Below are positions 4,133-11,317 of a DNA stretch of 64,000 nucleotides, one piece after another (position 1 is the stretch's first letter; each line of letters opens with the position of its first letter). The position numbers and the translations under genes were made by a program. Below the pieces are notes generated by a model. It was not told the origin of the DNA and did not search any database. It worked only from the letters and a program-made list of their open reading frames with translations. The DNA lies in the IMG/VR virus record IMGVR_UViG_3300010334_000023, positions 62,001-126,000 of that record. One strand, 5' to 3'.

Positions 4133-5599
4133 TTATTCTACCGTGGTTCTGTCTACTTTTTCAATGGTGAAGTCGTATTTGGCCTGTGTGTAGAACTGCT
4201 TGCGCTTGGTCAGATGCTTGGCACTGAACTTACAGGTGCTGGTTAGATCCCAGATCTGCACGAAGTCCTTGTCTTCAGCCTTGCGCAGGCCACGACCAAT
4301 GCTCTGGATCACACGCACAAAGCTCTTGCCAGGTTCGAGCATGACCAGATTGAACAAGCGAGGCACGTTGATGCCAACGGCTGCCACGCCATAGGTAGCT
4401 ATCAACACCTGATCATCGCTGATAGCAATGTTGTCATACTCTTCCTTGCGGTCCTTGGTCTTAACTGCGCCGCTGATGAATGTGCTGCCTCGGATGTATT
4501 CTTCCAACATCTTGCCAGTTTCGATGCGATCAACCAACACCAGAGTATTACCGCTGTCCTTGATAGCACCAATCATCTTGGCCATCCACTTGATGCGATC
4601 AGTGTCAGTGGTGAGGAACTTGAGCTCTTCCTGGTAGTTGGTATATTTCACTGTCTCGCGAGTCTGTAGCACGTTCACGTGGCACTTAGCCAACACGCCG
4701 CGATCCTGTAGCTCATGCGCAAACAGATCGCCCACGTTGGGTCCTATGCTAGCCAAGAGACTGATCTGGTTCTCTTCTTCTTCGGGTATGGTACCAGTGA
4801 GGCCCCAGCGTATGGGAATGTGGCGGAAGTTGTTGGTCAGCAGCTTGGTCAGCACGTCTGCCTTGGCCATGTGTGCTTCGTCCACGATGATGCCCATGAG
4901 GTCACGCATGAATATCTCATGCTGATGATCATCCAGCGCATCCTTGCTCTTCTTGTCCAGCACGTTCAGGCTCTGCCATGTGCAGATGGTGTGCGTCCTA
5001 TCGTATTCCTTGCGATCACCGTAGAGCACGCCCACGTCCAACCCCAGATTTCTGTAGTCTATCTCAGTCTGCTCAACCAAGCTCTTGTTGGGCACGATCA
5101 CTATGCTGCGGCCATAGGGTTCAATCAATCCGCTGAGCGTAGCTGTGATCAGAGTCTTGCCTGCGCCTGTAGCAACCTGTTGAACTGCTTGTAGATTTTC
5201 CACGAATGTGTTGATTACATCCACCTGGTAGTCACGCAGCAATATCTGCTGTCCGGCACGCTCATGACCCTTGGGCCATACCTTGTGAGCATGTGCTTGA
5301 TCGGTAACCGTGTTCAAGCTCAGCTCATAGCGCAGCCGGTTGTCTTCTATCTCAAAGTCGTAGCCATGCTCCTGAAGGATTGGCAGCATGCGATCTAAGA
5401 GACTGAGATAGGTACGCCCTCCCAGAGTAGCAAAGCTCTTGGTTCCGTCCCAGCGGCCCAGCTTGTAGGCTGCGCTGTAGCGTGCGCCTGGTATGAAGTA
5501 TTTCACAGCGTTCACGCAGGCCTTGCGAGCAGCCAGATCGAGATTGTTCATCTTGATGTTGACTTCGTCTTCAATCTCTATCACACAGTGCTTGATCAT
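4133..5599 (-). CDS. uvsW: UvsW-like superfamily 2 DNA helicase
   Basis: LRDYQ, ATGAGKT, DEAH, GLTGT, QSIGRGLR motifs; ATG 5599 follows a TTGTGT-17-TATACT promoter. Confidence 0.9.
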   Translation of the reverse strand: MIKHCVIEIEDEVNIKMNNLDLAARKACVNAVKYFIPGARYSAAYKLGRWDGTKSFATLGGRTYLSLLDRMLPILQEHGYDFEIEDNRLRYELSLNTVTDQAHAHKVWPKGHERAGQQILLRDYQVDVINTFVENLQAVQQVATGAGKTLITATLSGLIEPYGRSIVIVPNKSLVEQTEIDYRNLGLDVGVLYGDRKEYDRTHTICTWQSLNVLDKKSKDALDDHQHEIFMRDLMGIIVDEAHMAKADVLTKLLTNNFRHIPIRWGLTGTIPEEEENQISLLASIGPNVGDLFAHELQDRGVLAKCHVNVLQTRETVKYTNYQEELKFLTTDTDRIKWMAKMIGAIKDSGNTLVLVDRIETGKMLEEYIRGSTFISGAVKTKDRKEEYDNIAISDDQVLIATYGVAAVGINVPRLFNLVMLEPGKSFVRVIQSIGRGLRKAEDKDFVQIWDLTSTCKFSAKHLTKRKQFYTQAKYDFTIEKVDRTTVE

Positions 5600-5636
5600 C
5601 TCACAGTATACCTCATAGCCTGCTATCACACAAGCA

Positions 5637-5662
5637 GAGAGGAGGGATCGCTCCCTCCTCTC
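5637..5662 (-). terminator. Hairpin after groEL
   Basis: GAGAGGAGGGA-4 nt-TCCCTCCTCTC 11-bp stem; weak U-tract. Confidence 0.6.
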
Positions 5663-5687
5663 AGTATTTACAGCGATGTGAATCAGA

Positions 5688-7319
<1,632 letters not shown>

Positions 7320-7326
7320 TTACTCC

Positions 7327-7617
7327 TCAGTTTTCAATAACGGCAAAAAGTTCTTCTTCTTTGAGGACAAGTAGGTCTTGCCCGTCAATCTTGATCTGTG
7401 TGCCTGCATACTTGCCAAACAACACGCGATCATTCACGCTAACATCCAGCGGGATATAGTTGCCGCTATCATCCTTGGTCCCTTTGCCCACAGCAAGCAC
7501 TGTGCCCTGGTCAGGCTTCTCTGCTGCAGTGTCAGGGATGACGATGCCGCCCTTCGTGACAGTCTCGCTGTCCACGCGCTTCACTATGACCCGATTATTA
7601 AGCGGTCTCAGTTCCAT
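7327..7617 (-). CDS. groES: Co-chaperonin GroES
   Basis: [30 protein letters not shown]; AAGGAG RBS before ATG 7617. Confidence 0.97.
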
Positions 7618-7643
7618 CGTAGTCTCCTTGGTTAAATGGAAAA

Positions 7644-7670
7644 TTAGCACTCCATCAGTGGCAGTGCTAA
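7644..7670. promoter_or_regulatory. CIRCE element (HrcA operator)
   Basis: TTAGCACTC-N9-CAGTGCTAA, one mismatch to TTAGCACTC-N9-GAGTGCTAA, upstream of groES. Confidence 0.88.
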
Positions 7671-7678
7671 CACCTCAT

Positions 7679-7707
7679 AATATAGTCGGAGAATCTACTG
7701 AAAGCAA
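7679..7707 (-). promoter_or_regulatory. Sigma70-like promoter of groESL
   Basis: TTGCTT-17 nt-TATATT directly upstream of CIRCE. Confidence 0.65.
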
Positions 7708-7709
7708 GA

Positions 7710-8051
7710 GCCGGTTACGCGAGCGTCCACTCCTCCGGCGACCTTTATCGTAGGTCCGTTCACTGCCGCCTAATACCACCTGCTCACGCAGCTGGCGCTT
7801 ATCAAGCCTACGCACCCAGCGTCACGACCATGCCGTATAGTAGCGCCGTCAGGTCCCGGGACCTAGGCTGCTGTGCTGCTCCAGCATAGAAAAGCAGTCA
7901 GCCACTAGCTCGTCACCAGGCGTTACTCGATAGATGCGCTGGACGACTGGGCTCAAGGCCCGCGCTCCCGAGTTGCCAGCTGTGCGGACCCTGGGTGTTG
8001 ATCCTAGGCAGATTCCCATCAGCGGCAACTCTTCTGATGGCACACAGCTCA
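7710..8051 (-). ncRNA. Candidate large structured ncRNA, unclassified
   Basis: No credible ORF; own promoter; nested stems, 8-bp pseudoknot, long-range pairing, GNRA loop. Confidence 0.6.
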
Positions 8052-8056
8052 GCTAT

Positions 8057-8085
8057 AGTTTATGCGGCTTGGATGCTATTAGCAA
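8057..8085 (-). promoter_or_regulatory. Sigma70-like promoter of the candidate ncRNA
   Basis: TTGCTA-17 nt-TAAACT. Confidence 0.6.
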
Positions 8086-8144
8086 TACAGAGACAAAGAC
8101 GCAGCCAGTTTGGCTGCGTCATGTTTGTTTTATGCTGTTGGATA

Positions 8145-9173
8145 TCAAGCAGCCCTGCGATGGCAGCTCTTGGCAACCACTGACTGCCAGTTGCGCGGCA
8201 TGGCTTTACGCATGTCGCTGATCTTGAGGATCATGCGCAGGCTGAGCTCGCGAAGGTTATCCGCATGTGTCATGACATAATCAAGTACTTCAGATTTTTC
8301 CTGCTCATTGAACCCATAATTGCGCAGCATGTCGTGGCGTTCCACGGTGTTGCGGATGTGAATGAGCTTCTCGCGCTGAGAGTCAATGCCCAGATCCATG
8401 TAGTGGCAGCGGCTCACGATGGCTTCCAAATGGTTCTTCAAGCGCTCGCTGCGTACCTGATCAAACTTGAGGTTGGTGATGAACACGATGCCACCCTTGT
8501 ACTCGAAGCTGTTGGGCACACCGCTCTTCTCCAGTGCCAAACTGCGATGGTTGTAGCTGATGCGACGAGTCTTCTTGCTGTCCAGAGCAGCCTTGAGCAA
8601 GTTGAGGCAGTCCTCATCATAGAGCACGTTGTCGCAGTCATCAAACACCAGCACCTGTCCTTCCTCACGGAAGTAGTAGAGCTTCTCTACCAGCATGCTA
8701 GCACTGCATCCACCGCTGATCACTTCGTACATCTGTCCCATGCCATTCAAGCGGCCCAGCACGTCCAGCGTGTCATGCAGCGTGGTCTCCACAGTGTAGC
8801 TCTTACCAATACCAGCTGGACCACTCACAACCAAACCCTTGACGATGTTAGCCGCAACCGCGCGGCTCATGTCTTCGAGAATATCAAAAGTCTCTTGCAG
8901 TTCCTTGCGGATCTGATCATCTGTGCGAGCCTGCTCTGCTACTGGTGCCTTGGCTGCTGTGTGCAGCTCGCCAACATAGCTAATGTGAGCAGAATCGTTC
9001 ACATAGATGCGGTTGCGTCCCGCACGCAAGCCAGGTACATCTGCGCCATCTACCGTGATATAGATGCCGTCCTTGTCGCGCTTCTGCGTCTCAAGCAGCT
9101 TGAGAGAGACATTGCTTACGCTGGCTCCGCCGCGTGTGCGACCCTCTGTAACGTGTACGTAGCTTGCTGACAT
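8145..9173 (-). CDS. AAA+ ATPase
   Basis: GPAGIGKS Walker A, VLVFDD Walker B, FITN sensor, SRC; GGAG RBS before ATG 9173. Confidence 0.8.
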   Translation of the reverse strand: MSASYVHVTEGRTRGGASVSNVSLKLLETQKRDKDGIYITVDGADVPGLRAGRNRIYVNDSAHISYVGELHTAAKAPVAEQARTDDQIRKELQETFDILEDMSRAVAANIVKGLVVSGPAGIGKSYTVETTLHDTLDVLGRLNGMGQMYEVISGGCSASMLVEKLYYFREEGQVLVFDDCDNVLYDEDCLNLLKAALDSKKTRRISYNHRSLALEKSGVPNSFEYKGGIVFITNLKFDQVRSERLKNHLEAIVSRCHYMDLGIDSQREKLIHIRNTVERHDMLRNYGFNEQEKSEVLDYVMTHADNLRELSLRMILKISDMRKAMPRNWQSVVAKSCHRRAA

Positions 9174-9206
9174 GCTTTTGGCTCCGTTGTGCTCTCGTAT
9201 GTCCAT

Positions 9207-9244
9207 ACAATAGCACAATATGAGGTGCTGTCAAGCGGTTTTTT
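9207..9244 (-). promoter_or_regulatory. Early sigma70-type promoter
   Basis: AAAAAACCGC-TTGACA-16 nt-TATTGT with TG extension; near copy at 35791-35828. Confidence 0.7.
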
Positions 9245-9307
9245 CAGCATTATAGGCTTGAAATCATTGATGAAAATAGTGAAAAAACCGTTAAAAATAC
9301 CGCAGAT

Positions 9308-9772
9308 TCAGCCTCGAGTGTCCAGATGCGCATCTTCCATGCCCTGTATGCGCAGGCGCACGATATTGCTGATCTGGAACTGCTTCACGTCGAGGCCTTT
9401 GATCAGTGCCAGATACTTGTTGCGCACAAGCGCAACTTCGTTGATCAGCGTGGCCATGGTGACCACGTCATCTTCCCCATCGATGTACTTTTCGATGCTG
9501 CGATCAGTAAGCTCGCGCTGATAGCGTTCCAGATACCTGCGATAGTGATCGCTGCGTAGCTTATCATACTTTATGTTTAGATGCTTGAGTATGGCTTCAA
9601 CTTCCTGCAGCTGTCCAAAGCGATAGGCCATTATGCCGCTGAGTTCTTGGGCGGCTCTTTCGATGCCGCCCACGATCTTGGCTTCGACCCAGGAACCTTC
9701 CAGCTGATGTTGATACCAATCGATCGCATCTGGCAGCATAGCCATGTCATCGACGACTCGATTATACCACAT
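9308..9772 (-). CDS. uvsY: UvsY-like recombination mediator
   Basis: Helical 154 aa protein; KYIDGEDD, RNKYLALIKGLDVKQFQISNIVRLR; near uvsX. Confidence 0.75.
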   Translation of the reverse strand: MWYNRVVDDMAMLPDAIDWYQHQLEGSWVEAKIVGGIERAAQELSGIMAYRFGQLQEVEAILKHLNIKYDKLRSDHYRRYLERYQRELTDRSIEKYIDGEDDVVTMATLINEVALVRNKYLALIKGLDVKQFQISNIVRLRIQGMEDAHLDTRG

Positions 9773-10231: not shown

Positions 10232-11317
10232 TCAATCCTCCGATGTTGCGGAATCCATGTTGTCTGGATCAACTTCGAGTTCCAAGACTGGGGTTATCTT
10301 AGTCTCGTCCCATTCAGTCATGATCAGATCCAACAGCTCGTCGGTGACACCAGACCGGAAATACTTATGTTCCTTGCCTGTCTTGTCGGTGTACTTGAGC
10401 TTGTTGCCGTCCTTGACCAACACGCCCTTCTTTTCGAACATCTCGATCAGACCGCTATATTCGTTCATGCCAGTGTCCCAAGGGATCTTGATCTCCACGC
10501 TTTCAAACGGCTTGTTGTAGCGTGTCTTCATGATCTTGCAGGCTGCACGGATACCGCGCACGTCTGTGACCTTCTTGCCATCCTCATCTTCCTTGAGCTT
10601 GAGCTTGCGCATGGCTACCACGATAGAGCTTGCATACACAAATCCCTGACCGCCTGAGATCTTGTCATCCGGATCAAACATGTCTTGGCTGGCATAGGTG
10701 TGGTTGGTAACCACTAATCCAACGTCATACTCACCAAACATGTTCACGCAGTTGCGCACCAGTGCTGCCAGTGCCTTGGGCTTGCGACCCATGTCACCCT
10801 TCATCTCACCAGCTTCGAATTGGTTCACGTCGGTGGGTGTCAGCAGCATGCCCAGACTGTCCAGCACGAACAGGATCTTTGGACGCTCTTCTGGGTCAAC
10901 CTTGTCAAACCTGCTCTTGTAGTCTTTCATGAAGTCGCTGACCAAGCGAGCAACGTCGTCGATCATGGCCATGTTTACTTTGAGCAGCTTCTCATCACTC
11001 GTATCAACGCCCAGTGGCTTGAGCCAGTTCTCGTCAAGTGCGTTCTCTGTATCGATCAAGATCGGGAACACACCCGCTCGCTGAGCGTTTCTTATGACGT
11101 TGCCTGAGCAGATATAGCTTTTGCCGGAACCAGATTGTCCAGCAAACATGGTGACCTTGCCCAACGGGATACCGTTCTTGAAGTCACCACTGATAGCATA
11201 GTTTAGAGCGTAATTACCGCTGTGGATCCAAGTCTTAGGATCATGGAATCCAAGGCTGAGACTAGGGATAGTCTTGGCGATGTCCTTCCTGAATTTACTG
11301 ATGTCAAATGGCTTCAC
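10232..11317 (-). CDS. uvsX: UvsX/RecA-like recombinase
   Basis: AGQSGSGKS, IDTENA, LDSLG, NHTY, SGG, KTRY. Confidence 0.93.
   Translation of the reverse strand: MKPFDISKFRKDIAKTIPSLSLGFHDPKTWIHSGNYALNYAISGDFKNGIPLGKVTMFAGQSGSGKSYICSGNVIRNAQRAGVFPILIDTENALDENWLKPLGVDTSDEKLLKVNMAMIDDVARLVSDFMKDYKSRFDKVDPEERPKILFVLDSLGMLLTPTDVNQFEAGEMKGDMGRKPKALAALVRNCVNMFGEYDVGLVVTNHTYASQDMFDPDDKISGGQGFVYASSIVVAMRKLKLKEDEDGKKVTDVRGIRAACKIMKTRYNKPFESVEIKIPWDTGMNEYSGLIEMFEKKGVLVKDGNKLKYTDKTGKEHKYFRSGVTDELLDLIMTEWDETKITPVLELEVDPDNMDSATSED

What the first reader, a model, noticed from the sequence alone, without database searches (positions are those of the whole stretch)
7710..8085. Promoter-driven ~340-nt pseudoknotted RNA upstream of phage groESL
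Seen (minus strand): a TTGCTA-17-TAAACT promoter (8085-8057) points into an ORF-free region that ends at the separate groESL promoter (7707). The 5' domain has P1 (8041-8049 with 7978-7986, 9 bp) enclosing P2 (8034-8040 with 8016-8022). The P2 loop GAGUUGCC (8031-8024) is perfectly complementary to GGCAACUC (7977-7970), which directly follows P1, giving an 8-bp pseudoknot. Downstream are GGGC/GCCC, GGCUG/CAGCC enclosing CUGCU/AGCAG, GGCGCU/AGCGCC, CUGC-GUGA-GCAG, GACCU/AGGUC and CCGG/CCGG, plus possible long-range pairs GAGCG/CGCUC and CGUCCA/UGGACG. I see no RNase P (GAGGAAAGUCC), tmRNA, SRP or intron hallmarks. Inference: a stand-alone, possibly new phage ncRNA or ribozyme, or an elaborate groESL leader.
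Basis: partly seen in the sequence, partly recalled or inferred. Interest (0 to 1): 0.78.

Follow-up and report, generated by a model that had tools for sequence, protein, structure and literature searches.

The report
New structured RNA of lake phages
A group of uncultured freshwater jumbo phages carries a promoter-driven RNA of about 340 bases that does not code for protein, keeps a pseudoknotted fold through compensatory mutations, matches no known RNA family and is found in lake RNA libraries, which makes it a good candidate for a new functional phage RNA.

Summary

On its own the fold is no more stable than shuffled sequence (z = -0.08). The evidence comes from relatives. I collected about 25 distinct homologues in six sequence groups from lake viromes and metagenomes.
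- All keep a -35/-10 pair around a diverged spacer.
- The 64-aa ORF is frameshifted in half of the close relatives.
- A sequence-only alignment pairs 99.4% of cells in a revised structure, with 10 compensatory pairs. Every one-sided change gives or resolves a G-U wobble.
- The long-range helix CGUCCA/UGGACG changes sequence completely between groups yet stays complementary. It crosses helix GCCGG/CCGGC, so the RNA has a real pseudoknot.

One group has the RNA but no groESL, and other relatives have groESL without the RNA, so it is not a groESL leader. Rfam gives no match. Exact contigs cover it in four lake RNA libraries.

Verdict: a real, apparently new structured phage ncRNA. Its function is unknown and is most likely exerted in trans.

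The parts
8098..8120 (-). Intrinsic terminator of the upstream AAA-ATPase gene (10-bp stem, then a T run). It separates that gene from the RNA unit.
8057..8085 (-). Promoter of the RNA: -35 TTGCTA (8085-8080), 17-nt spacer, -10 TAAACT (8062-8057). The predicted start is near 8050.
   Evidence: A -35 TTG(C) and a -10 (C)ATAxxT are kept in all six groups while the spacers differ. Only 8 of 12 positions match the consensus, so the support comes from conservation.
7710..8050 (-). Predicted non-coding RNA of about 340 nt. The 5' end is inferred from the promoter. The 3' end is at or just after helix Hb and has not been mapped.
   Evidence: Nucleotide homology to relatives runs from 8065 to about 7700. 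Exact metatranscriptome contigs lie within 7724-8039. The ORF is not conserved. No Rfam match.
7978..8049 (-). 5' domain. P1 (8049-8041 / 7986-7978) encloses hairpin P2 (8040-8034 / 8022-8016, loop AAGAGUUGCCG) and hairpin P2b (8008-8006 and 8004-8003 / 7994-7990).
   Evidence: P2 is 100% paired with 4 compensatory pairs. P2b has 2 compensatory pairs. P1 is 98% paired with only G-U-type one-sided changes.
7927..7971 (-). Helix Hd (7971-7962 / 7939-7927, with bulges). It encloses hairpin E (GGGC 7961-7958 / GCCC 7952-7949, loop CUUGA) and the 5' strand of the long-range helix Hc (CGUCCA 7945-7940).
   Evidence: Hd is 99% paired, with U-A changed to C-G in 3 sequences. A helix at this position is present in groups A to D with different sequences. 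The E hairpin is present in all groups with different stems.
7724..7729 (-). 3' strand of the long-range helix Hc (UGGACG), pairing with 7945-7940. It lies inside the loop of Hb, which makes a pseudoknot.
   Evidence: Own-pair Watson-Crick helices are 6 to 9 bp in 9 of 11 representatives and 7 bp with one G-U in the other two. Ninety non-cognate pairings reach at most 5 bp. G-C is changed to A-U in L147.
7870..7902 (-). Hairpin X: GCUG 7902-7899 / CAGC 7873-7870 and CUGCUU 7897-7892 / GGAGCA 7881-7876.
   Evidence: 98% paired, one compensatory pair, and several changes from C-G to U-G. A hairpin at the same position exists in groups B and D with other sequences (and inspection).
7845..7868 (-). 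Hairpin D: GCC/GGC closing UAGGUCC/GGACCUG with an AC bulge. It carries the conserved CCUGACGG motif. Its core, 7864-7851, is a 14-nt palindrome.
   Evidence: The stem is AGGUCC/GGACCU in the window, AGGAU/AUCCU in L188, AGGC/GCCU in L199 and AGGUA/UACCU in L198. The hairpin is absent from groups C and E.
7780..7807 (-). Two small hairpins: GCUU 7807-7804 / AAGC 7800-7797, and CUGC-GUGA-GCAG 7791-7780.
Evidence: The second is compatible but is deleted in L147.
7710..7763 (-). Most conserved 3' core: GUGAACG, hairpin Ha (GACC 7756-7753 / GGUC 7743-7740), helix Hb (GCCGG 7739-7735 / CCGGC 7714-7710), and the invariant runs CGCCGGAG and GCGUAACC.
   Evidence: 30 invariant columns across 15 sequences of six groups. 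Ha is GUCC/GGAC in L193 and Hb is GCUGG/CCAGC in group C. Model R1 finds a single copy in the 216-kb record at 78.9 bits.
7644..7707 (-). Not part of the RNA. This is the next promoter, TTGCTT (7707-7702)-17-TATATT (7684-7679), followed by the CIRCE-type operator TTAGCACTG-N9-GAGTGCTAA (7670-7644) and then groES (7617-7327) and groEL (7313-5688).

Best explanation
This is a separate gene for a non-coding RNA of about 340 nt, the founding example of a family confined so far to one clade of uncultured freshwater jumbo phages. The GroES of these phages is closest to that of Burkholderiales.

Shown:
- The RNA has its own sigma-70-type promoter, conserved in every member.
- It does not code for protein.
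- Its fold is under selection on the minus-strand transcript.
- The fold has a 5' domain (P1 enclosing two hairpins), a helix Hd that encloses a GNRA-like hairpin E, several hairpins, and a nearly invariant 3' core (AACGG-hairpin-CGCCGGAG...GCGUAACCGGC).
- The strand just after hairpin E pairs over about 210 nt with the loop of the terminal helix Hb. This pseudoknot ties the two halves together.

Inferred:
- The RNA is made by the host polymerase early in infection and accumulates as a discrete molecule ending at or just after Hb.
- It acts in trans as a folded particle: a protein-binding scaffold, a ribozyme or a self-assembling RNA, in the manner of other large ornate phage-associated RNAs.
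- It does not act as a regulator of groESL.
For: Homologues: about 25 distinct sequences in six groups.

Promoter: the -35/-10 pair is kept while the spacers differ, including in non-coding contexts.

Structure:
- On a sequence-only MAFFT alignment of 12 group-A sequences, 99.4% of 932 cells pair.
- That alignment has 10 pairs with compensatory change, and 0 of 500 shuffles reach the observed value. Slid controls pair 31-41%.
- All one-sided changes give or resolve G-U. None gives A-C, so the constraint lies on this strand's RNA.
- Hc covaries between groups (CGUCCA/UGGACG, CAUCCA/UGGAUG, ACGCUCGA/UCGAGCGU, CGUUCGA/UCGAACG, UUCCAGA/UCUGGAA, GAUCCGU/ACGGAUC). Non-cognate pairs reach at most 5 bp.
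- Ha and Hb show compensatory changes.

Not coding: the 64-aa frame is shifted or stopped in 6 of 12 relatives.

Independent of groESL:
- Group B has the RNA between the AAA gene and the helicase, with no groESL.
- L189-L197 have groESL with only 113 nt upstream of it.
- The upstream neighbour varies.

Expression:
- Exact contigs lie within 7724-8039 in four lake RNA libraries.
- In X2 and X3 the AAA gene has depth 0 while the RNA has depth 1.4-6.5, comparable with the exact groES/groEL contigs.
- No listed contig bridges 7650-7724.

No known family: Rfam gives no match at gathering score or at E <= 10 for the window, or at E <= 5 for five other groups. The same library finds the record's tmRNA at 129.8 bits.
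Against: - There is no intrinsic terminator after the RNA. The next promoter abuts or overlaps its last helix, so read-through into groESL or the helicase is possible and the 3' end is unmapped.
- The RNA libraries are represented by low-depth contigs without strand information. X1 covers the neighbouring gene as well, which is compatible with DNA carry-over.
- Thermodynamic stability is not above shuffles.
- The cross-group helices were aligned by hand around anchors.
- Some close relatives lack the RNA, so it is dispensable.
- No partner protein, target or catalytic motif was identified. 'Acts in trans' is an inference.
Confidence: 0.55

Rival explanations
1. A cis-acting 5' leader of the operon that follows (groES-groEL-helicase, or the helicase alone in group B). 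The folded RNA would act on the polymerase or transcript that made it, for example by processive antitermination as with HK022 put or EAR, or by controlling transcript stability or processing.
For: - There is no terminator between the RNA and the downstream genes.
- The RNA always sits at the head of a same-strand gene array that contains the UvsW-type helicase.
- In the window a terminator just upstream makes it the first element of a new unit.
- Hairpin E, with its GC stem and (U)GAAA/GAUA loop, loosely recalls boxB-type hairpins. This is my own knowledge and was not tested.
Against: - A complete second promoter follows at once in every member, and the distance between Hb and that promoter varies from 0 to 16 nt.
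- The first downstream gene differs between groups.
- Relatives run the same genes without the RNA.
- No listed RNA-library contig spans 7650-7724.
- At 340 nt with a long-range pseudoknot it is far larger than known antiterminator RNAs.
Confidence: 0.22
2. An origin-of-replication transcript: a structured primer or R-loop RNA, as ColE1 RNA II or the T4 ori(uvsY) transcript, placed inside the recombination and replication module.
For: The neighbours are UvsX-like, UvsY-like and UvsW-type helicase genes. From my own knowledge, T4 has a promoter-dependent origin at uvsY and UvsW removes origin R-loops, and ColE1 RNA II needs a defined fold.
Against: - Cumulative GC skew shows no turning point at the element. 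The minimum lies about 76 kb away.
- There are no iterons or an AT-rich unwinding stretch.
- Close relatives, including a 111-kb fragment, lack the element.
- The strongest conservation is in junction nucleotides of a pseudoknotted core, which is typical of a folded RNA particle.
Confidence: 0.08
3. A small protein gene (the 64-aa ORF 8043-7849), or a DNA-level regulatory region with no RNA function. In that case the helices would be what any 55-60% GC sequence yields.
For: The ORF exists. The fold is no more stable than shuffles. The most conserved 60 nt lie just upstream of the next promoter and could in principle be a protein-binding site.
Against: - The ORF frame is broken in 6 of 12 close relatives and has no Pfam match.
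- Compensatory changes and G-U-only one-sided changes cannot be explained at the DNA or protein level.
- In group C the conserved core is separated from the next promoter by 12-16 variable nt and shows a compensatory change.
Confidence: 0.04

Closest known systems
Large ornate phage- and lake-associated ncRNAs of unknown function (GOLLD, ROOL; Rfam RF01998, RF03087; cryo-EM in PMC12286853)
   Same: It is a long, multi-helix, pseudoknotted non-coding RNA encoded by phages and found in lake metagenomes. It has GNRA-like hairpins, no known partner and patchy distribution among relatives.
   Different: There is no sequence or structure match by covariance model. It is about half the size or less. 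It has its own promoter and lies in a recombination/chaperonin neighbourhood rather than near tRNAs. Oligomerisation was not tested.
phi29 packaging RNA (pRNA)
   Same: A phage-encoded, promoter-driven structured RNA that works in trans as part of a machine.
   Different: There is no Rfam match. It is not located near packaging genes. The size and fold are different.
HK022 put and other processive-antitermination RNAs
   Same: It lies directly downstream of a promoter at the head of a gene array, with no terminator after it.
   Different: It is five times larger, has a long-range pseudoknot, and is followed by an independent promoter. Relatives do without it.
ColE1 RNA II / T4 ori(uvsY) origin transcripts
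   Same: A promoter-driven non-coding transcript in a replication and recombination gene neighbourhood (UvsX, UvsY, UvsW).
   Different: There is no skew switch, no iterons and no AT-rich element. The conserved pseudoknotted core argues for a free folded RNA.
P3-P7 pseudoknot topology of group I introns
   Same: The 5' strand of the terminal helix (Hb) is followed almost at once by the 3' strand of a long-range helix (Hc), as P7 5' is followed by P3 3'. This is a resemblance from memory only.
   Different: There are no exons, no P1/P10, no P8 and no G-binding-site signature, and no match to Intron_gpI. I do not claim membership.

Membership tests
Any Rfam 15 family (RNase P, tmRNA, SRP, 6S, group I/II introns, GOLLD, ROOL, HEARO, OLE, raiA, pRNA, riboswitches, small ribozymes) | Covariance-model score at or near the family's gathering threshold | tested here: not met
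   No match at gathering score in the 64-kb window. Only two chance matches at E 2.5-6, neither related, in 7550-8250. Nothing in the elements of five other groups at E <= 5. Positive control: the same record's tmRNA scores 129.8 bits.
groESL leader / heat-shock cis-regulator | Constant linkage to groESL and transcription as its 5' UTR | tested here: not met
   Group B has the RNA without groESL. L189-L197 have groESL without the RNA. A separate promoter and the CIRCE operator lie between the RNA and groES.
Small protein gene | Reading frame kept among relatives | tested here: not met
   Indels of 1-2 nt, stops and altered sequence occur in 6 of 12 group-A relatives. There is no common ORF across groups.
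Conserved structured RNA (generic) | Base pairs kept through compensatory and G-U changes beyond controls, on a sequence-only alignment | tested here: met
   99.4% of cells paired, 10 compensatory pairs, 0 of 500 shuffles reach the observed value, and slid controls pair 31-41%. Cognate Hc helices are 6-9 bp (7 bp with one G-U in two group C sequences) against at most 5 bp for non-cognate pairs.
Stand-alone bacterial/phage sRNA gene | Own promoter and own intrinsic terminator | tested here: inconclusive
   The promoter is conserved. There is no canonical terminator: Hb is followed only by a moderately U-rich stretch. RNA-library contigs stop at 7724-7733, but their depth is low.
Self-cleaving or other ribozyme | Catalytic activity or a known catalytic core | not testable with these tools
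   No known ribozyme model matches. Activity needs a bench assay.
Replication origin transcript | Coincidence with a replication start (skew switch, unwinding element, iterons) | tested here: not met
   The skew minimum is at about 146 kb of the record and the element is at 69.7 kb. There are no repeats or AT-rich block. Skew is a weak marker in phages.

The most novel reading that the evidence does not exclude
The RNA is the first member of a new class of large self-folding phage RNAs. It would have an activity of its own (catalysis, RNA-only assembly, or capture of a host factor) and be used by freshwater jumbo phages during early infection. It would be unrelated to any described RNA family.
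Probability: 0.35. Interest if true: 0.8.

Novelty: categorically new. Interest (0 to 1): 0.68.

Why it matters
Few large, complex-folded bacterial or phage RNAs are known. Each one found so far (RNase P, group I and II introns, GOLLD, ROOL, OLE) has turned out to be a ribozyme, a machine part or an unexpected assembly.

This candidate is well suited to study. It is compact at about 340 nt. Its promoter is defined. Its pseudoknotted core is backed by covariation. It has about 30 invariant nucleotides in 60 nt of the 3' core. Natural presence/absence variants exist, and there is evidence of expression in nature. It can therefore go straight to in-vitro transcription, chemical probing, cleavage assays and cryo-EM, even though neither phage nor host is cultured.

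It also shows that uncultured jumbo phages carry RNA genes that protein-centred annotation leaves blank.

Tried and rejected
1. Known families. Rfam at gathering score and at a permissive E-value, on the window and on five other groups, gave nothing. ARAGORN found no tRNA or tmRNA in the window.
2. Single-sequence thermodynamics. z = -0.08, which is uninformative.
3. Cultured phages. blastn of the region against 50,697 phage records found no match. The neighbouring AAA protein is at most 34% identical to any isolate, the nearest being the PA5oct group.
4. Cellular counterpart. A degenerate 3'-core motif scanned over 185,579 species genomes gave 49 hits. All are chance matches in GC-rich DNA (the three inspected lie in what look like coding regions), and none has GCGUAACCRGC downstream. 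Model R1 scores two of them at about 27 bits, against 79 for true members.
5. Further viral scans with three other motifs returned only the same clade.
6. Not supported. An alternative partner for the P2 loop, 7917-7912, fits 71 of 72 cells but does not exceed shuffles, so it stays a lead.
7. Antisense to groES. Two complementary stretches exist (10/10 and 12/13), but they are at chance expectation and L025 breaks both without compensation.
8. Origin of replication. No skew turn, repeats or AT-rich block.
9. Hidden copies in relatives that lack the element. None was found in a 111-kb relative or in 16 loci.
10. K-turn, ZTP-like, HDV-like and RNase P P4-like resemblances, noticed by eye in single sequences, were not conserved across groups and were dropped.
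11. Literature searches found no description. One query was rejected for its syntax.
12. A full cross-group consensus of the 5' and middle domains could not be settled. Groups C and E lack hairpin D, and the groups differ in how the 5' end is closed.
Full report
WHAT IS IN THE WINDOW. The window is part of a 216-kb IMG/VR virus record that CheckV rates 42% complete, so it is a jumbo phage. The features below are read on the minus strand.
- An AAA-ATPase gene (9218-8145) ends at TGA 8147-8145.
- A 10-bp intrinsic terminator lies at 8120-8098.
- About 340 nt follow.
- A second promoter is TTGCTT (7707-7702), 17 nt, TATATT (7684-7679).
- A CIRCE-type inverted repeat, TTAGCACTG-N9-GAGTGCTAA, lies at 7670-7644.
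- Then come groES (7617-7327), groEL (7313-5688) and a DEAD/ResIII helicase (5629-4133).
- Further upstream are a UvsY-like gene (9772-9308) and a UvsX-like gene (11317-10232).

IS IT MORE THAN CHANCE ON ITS OWN? No. The minimum free energy of 8052-7700 is -143.2 kcal/mol, against -142.7 +/- 6.2 for dinucleotide shuffles (z = -0.08; 42 of 100 shuffles fold at least as well). Both promoters match the sigma-70 consensus at only 8 of 12 positions, and the consensus scan did not list them. Rfam gives nothing at gathering score for the whole window and only two irrelevant chance matches at E 2.5-6 for 7550-8250. From the sequence alone the observation could not be told from what any 55-60% GC spacer offers.

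HOMOLOGUES. I searched in four ways.
- Viral contigs were searched with the neighbouring AAA protein and with conserved motifs.
- One metagenome scan was run.
- GroES relatives were looked up in ENA, JGI and Logan assemblies.

Together these gave about 25 distinct versions of the element in six sequence groups.
- A: the window, ten relatives at 89-98% identity, and L147 at 74%.
- B: L003 and L005.
- C: L185, L202, L204, L205 and L206.
- D: L188, L199 and L200.
- E: L193.
- F: L198.

All come from lake or other freshwater samples. The nucleotide homology of close relatives begins at window 8065 and ends near 7700, which matches the predicted transcription unit.

IT IS AN INDEPENDENT UNIT, NOT A groESL LEADER.
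- In group B there is no groESL. The element lies between the AAA gene and the helicase.
- More distant relatives (L007, L008, L010-L015, L019) have the AAA gene directly followed by the helicase, with no element.
- Relatives L189-L192 and L194-L197 have groESL with only 113 nt upstream and no element.
- The upstream neighbour varies. It is the AAA gene, a radical-SAM gene (L158, L160, L148, L034, L199), the UvsY-like gene (L193, L198) or a small ORF.
- A covariance model of the 3' core finds one copy in the 216-kb record (78.9 bits). It finds none in a 111-kb relative or in the element-less loci.

PROMOTER. In every group a -35 TTG(C) and a -10 (C)ATAxxT are kept 16-17 nt apart, while the spacer and the upstream DNA differ. 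In loci with the radical-SAM gene these hexamers overlap its last codons and stop codon, so conservation there could be due to coding. The same hexamers are kept where the region is non-coding (the window, L146, L075, L147, group C). A second promoter, CTCTTGC...TATATT, follows the element at 0-16 nt in all groups.

NOT CODING. The 64-aa frame (8043-7849) is shifted by indels of 1-2 nt or interrupted in L160, L025, L146, L179, L147 and L034. No ORF is shared across groups, and there is no Pfam match.

STRUCTURE WITHIN GROUP A. This was tested on a MAFFT alignment made without reference to structure.

- P2 has four compensatory pairs and no exception.
- P1 is 98% paired, with three G-C to G-U changes.
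- The 8-bp loop pseudoknot is only 84% paired. Five of its eight pairs depart only by unpaired cells, and one pair is broken in 6 of 12 sequences.
- GGCGCU/AGCGCC is broken in 6 of 12 sequences at one pair.
- GAGCG/CGCUC loses pairing at one pair in three sequences.

A revised set pairs 99.4% of 932 cells.
- It keeps P1, P2, hairpin E, hairpin X, CUGC-GUGA-GCAG, Ha and Hb.
- It adds hairpin P2b, the local helix Hd, hairpin D, the small hairpin 7807-7804/7800-7797 and the long-range helix Hc.
- Ten pairs show compensatory change in 17 cells. No shuffle of 500 reaches these values, and slid controls pair 31-41%.
- The small hairpin has G-C in six sequences and U-A in six.
- Every one-sided substitution gives or resolves a G-U pair. 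None gives A-C. The constraint therefore acts on the minus-strand transcript and not on duplex DNA.

STRUCTURE BETWEEN GROUPS. These comparisons are anchored by hand on the invariant motifs.
- The strand just 3' of hairpin E pairs with the variable stretch between CGCCGGAG and GCGUAA. The sequences are unrelated from group to group:
  - CGUCCA/UGGACG (window);
  - CAUCCA/UGGAUG (L147);
  - UCGUCCA/UGGACGA (B);
  - GCCUGGG/CCCGGGC and variants (C);
  - GCGUUCGA/UCGAACGU and CACGCUCGA/UCGAGCGUG (D);
  - UUCCAGA/UCUGGAA (E);
  - GAUCCGU/ACGGAUC (F).
- Counting Watson-Crick pairs only, cognate helices are 6-9 bp. The exception is 4 bp in two group C sequences, which reach 7 bp with one G-U. In 90 non-cognate combinations the longest helix is 5 bp, seen once.
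- Ha is GACC/GGUC, GGCC/GGUC or GUCC/GGAC. Hb is GCCGG/CCGGC, or GCUGG/CCAGC in all five group C sequences.
- The 3' strand of Hc lies inside the loop of Hb while its 5' strand lies about 210 nt upstream. Hc and Hb therefore form a pseudoknot, and Hc also crosses Hd.
- A helix enclosing hairpin E and the Hc strand (Hd) is present in groups A to D with different sequences. It is 8-9 contiguous bp in most of group C and in L188.
- Hairpin D keeps its position with stems AGGUCC/GGACCU, AGGAU/AUCCU, AGGC/GCCU and AGGUA/UACCU. It is missing in groups C and E.
- Thirty columns of the 3' core are invariant in all 15 representatives.
- The 5' domain could not be reconciled across groups. The P2 loop may pair with 7917-7912 (71 of 72 cells), but that does not exceed shuffles.

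EXPRESSION. Ten lake libraries filed as metatranscriptomic hold part of the stretch; four of them are probably DNA. Logan contigs of four RNA libraries were laid on 5500-9400.
- Exact contigs (0 differences) cover 7724-7906, 7733-7952, 7776-7963 and 7833-8039. All lie inside the predicted RNA.
- In X2 and X3 the AAA gene has depth 0, which serves as a silent control.
- In those two libraries the RNA bins have depth 1.4-6.2. Exact groEL and groES contigs have depth 4.1 and 3.1.
- No listed contig bridges 7650-7724.
- X1 also covers the AAA gene at a similar depth, so DNA carry-over there cannot be excluded.
- Contigs carry no strand, depths are low, and contigs show presence rather than absence. 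This supports expression but does not map the ends.

WHAT IT IS NOT LIKE.
- Rfam searches of five further groups gave nothing. The same library finds the record's permuted tmRNA at 129.8 bits.
- A degenerate 3'-core motif scanned over one genome of each of 185,579 prokaryotic species gave 49 hits. None has the rest of the core, and all are taken as chance matches in GC-rich DNA; the three inspected look coding.
- No cultured phage has the DNA. The neighbouring AAA protein is at most 34% identical to any isolate.
- Literature searches found no description.

HOW IT MOST LIKELY WORKS.

Shown: a conserved promoter, a non-coding transcript-strand fold with a long-range pseudoknot and an invariant core, independence from groESL, and presence in RNA libraries.

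Inferred: host RNA polymerase transcribes it early. The RNA accumulates as a molecule of about 340 nt ending at or just after Hb, and acts in trans as a folded particle. I put this at about 0.55.

Rivals:
- A cis-acting operon leader, for example put-like antitermination (about 0.22). The missing terminator and the position at the head of the helicase-containing array favour it. The intervening promoter, the variable downstream gene and the RNA-free relatives count against it.
- An origin transcript in the UvsX/UvsY/UvsW module (about 0.08). No skew turn, repeats or AT-rich block support it.
- A small protein or a purely DNA-level element (about 0.04). It is contradicted by frameshifts and covariation.

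Complementarity of two 5'-domain stretches to groES codons is at chance level and is not maintained.

VERDICT. The emphasised 8-bp pseudoknot and two of the long-range pairings do not hold, and a different pseudoknot does. By every library available here the family is new. Its function is unknown, and the 'trans-acting folded RNA' mechanism is an inference that the steps listed above can test.

Noticed in passing
window 7644-7707 (- strand): The phage groESL operon has its own promoter followed by a near-perfect CIRCE operator (TTAGCACTG-N9-GAGTGCTAA), the binding site of the host repressor HrcA. It is conserved in relatives. This suggests that the phage chaperonin genes are wired into the host heat-shock circuit.
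   Followed up: partly
outside the window: G000:C1:30206-30573 (- strand), locus L257:507-874: The same virus record encodes a permuted (two-piece) tmRNA (Rfam alpha_tmRNA, 129.8 bits; also called by ARAGORN). ARAGORN finds no tRNA gene in the 216 kb.
   Followed up: yes
L158:2865-4010 (also L160, L148, L034, L199): Relatives carry a radical-SAM gene (CxxxCxxC; phrog_14086) between the AAA gene and the RNA, and the window lacks it. Its last codons and stop codon overlap the RNA promoter hexamers. Any functional link to the RNA is unknown.
   Followed up: partly
window 8145-9218, joint near 8065: The AAA-ATPase gene is only about 63% identical in protein to that of relatives whose flanking genes (UvsY-like, GroES, GroEL, helicase) are 90-100% identical. 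This points to a recombination joint right at the RNA promoter.
   Followed up: no
window 8021-8030 with 7458-7467; 8039-8051 with 7392-7404: Two stretches of the RNA 5' domain are complementary to the groES coding sequence (10 of 10 and 12 of 13). Each is about what chance gives in 1.2 kb, and L025 breaks both without compensation. I treated this as coincidence.
   Followed up: partly
window 8024-8029 with 7912-7917: The conserved P2 loop GUUGCC fits GGUGAC in 71 of 72 cells of the group-A alignment. Changes from A-U to G-U, G-U to A-U, G-U to G-C and U-A to C-G are all tolerated.
   Followed up: partly
window 7851-7864: The core of hairpin D (AGGUCCCGGGACCU) is a perfect 14-nt palindrome, and helix Hc of group C (CCCGGG) is palindromic too. 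Either could form intermolecular duplexes if the RNA oligomerises.
   Followed up: no
window 4133-5629, 9308-9772, 10232-11317: The neighbourhood is a T4-type recombination module (UvsW-type helicase, UvsY-like mediator, UvsX-like recombinase), with groESL and the RNA inserted into it.
   Followed up: partly
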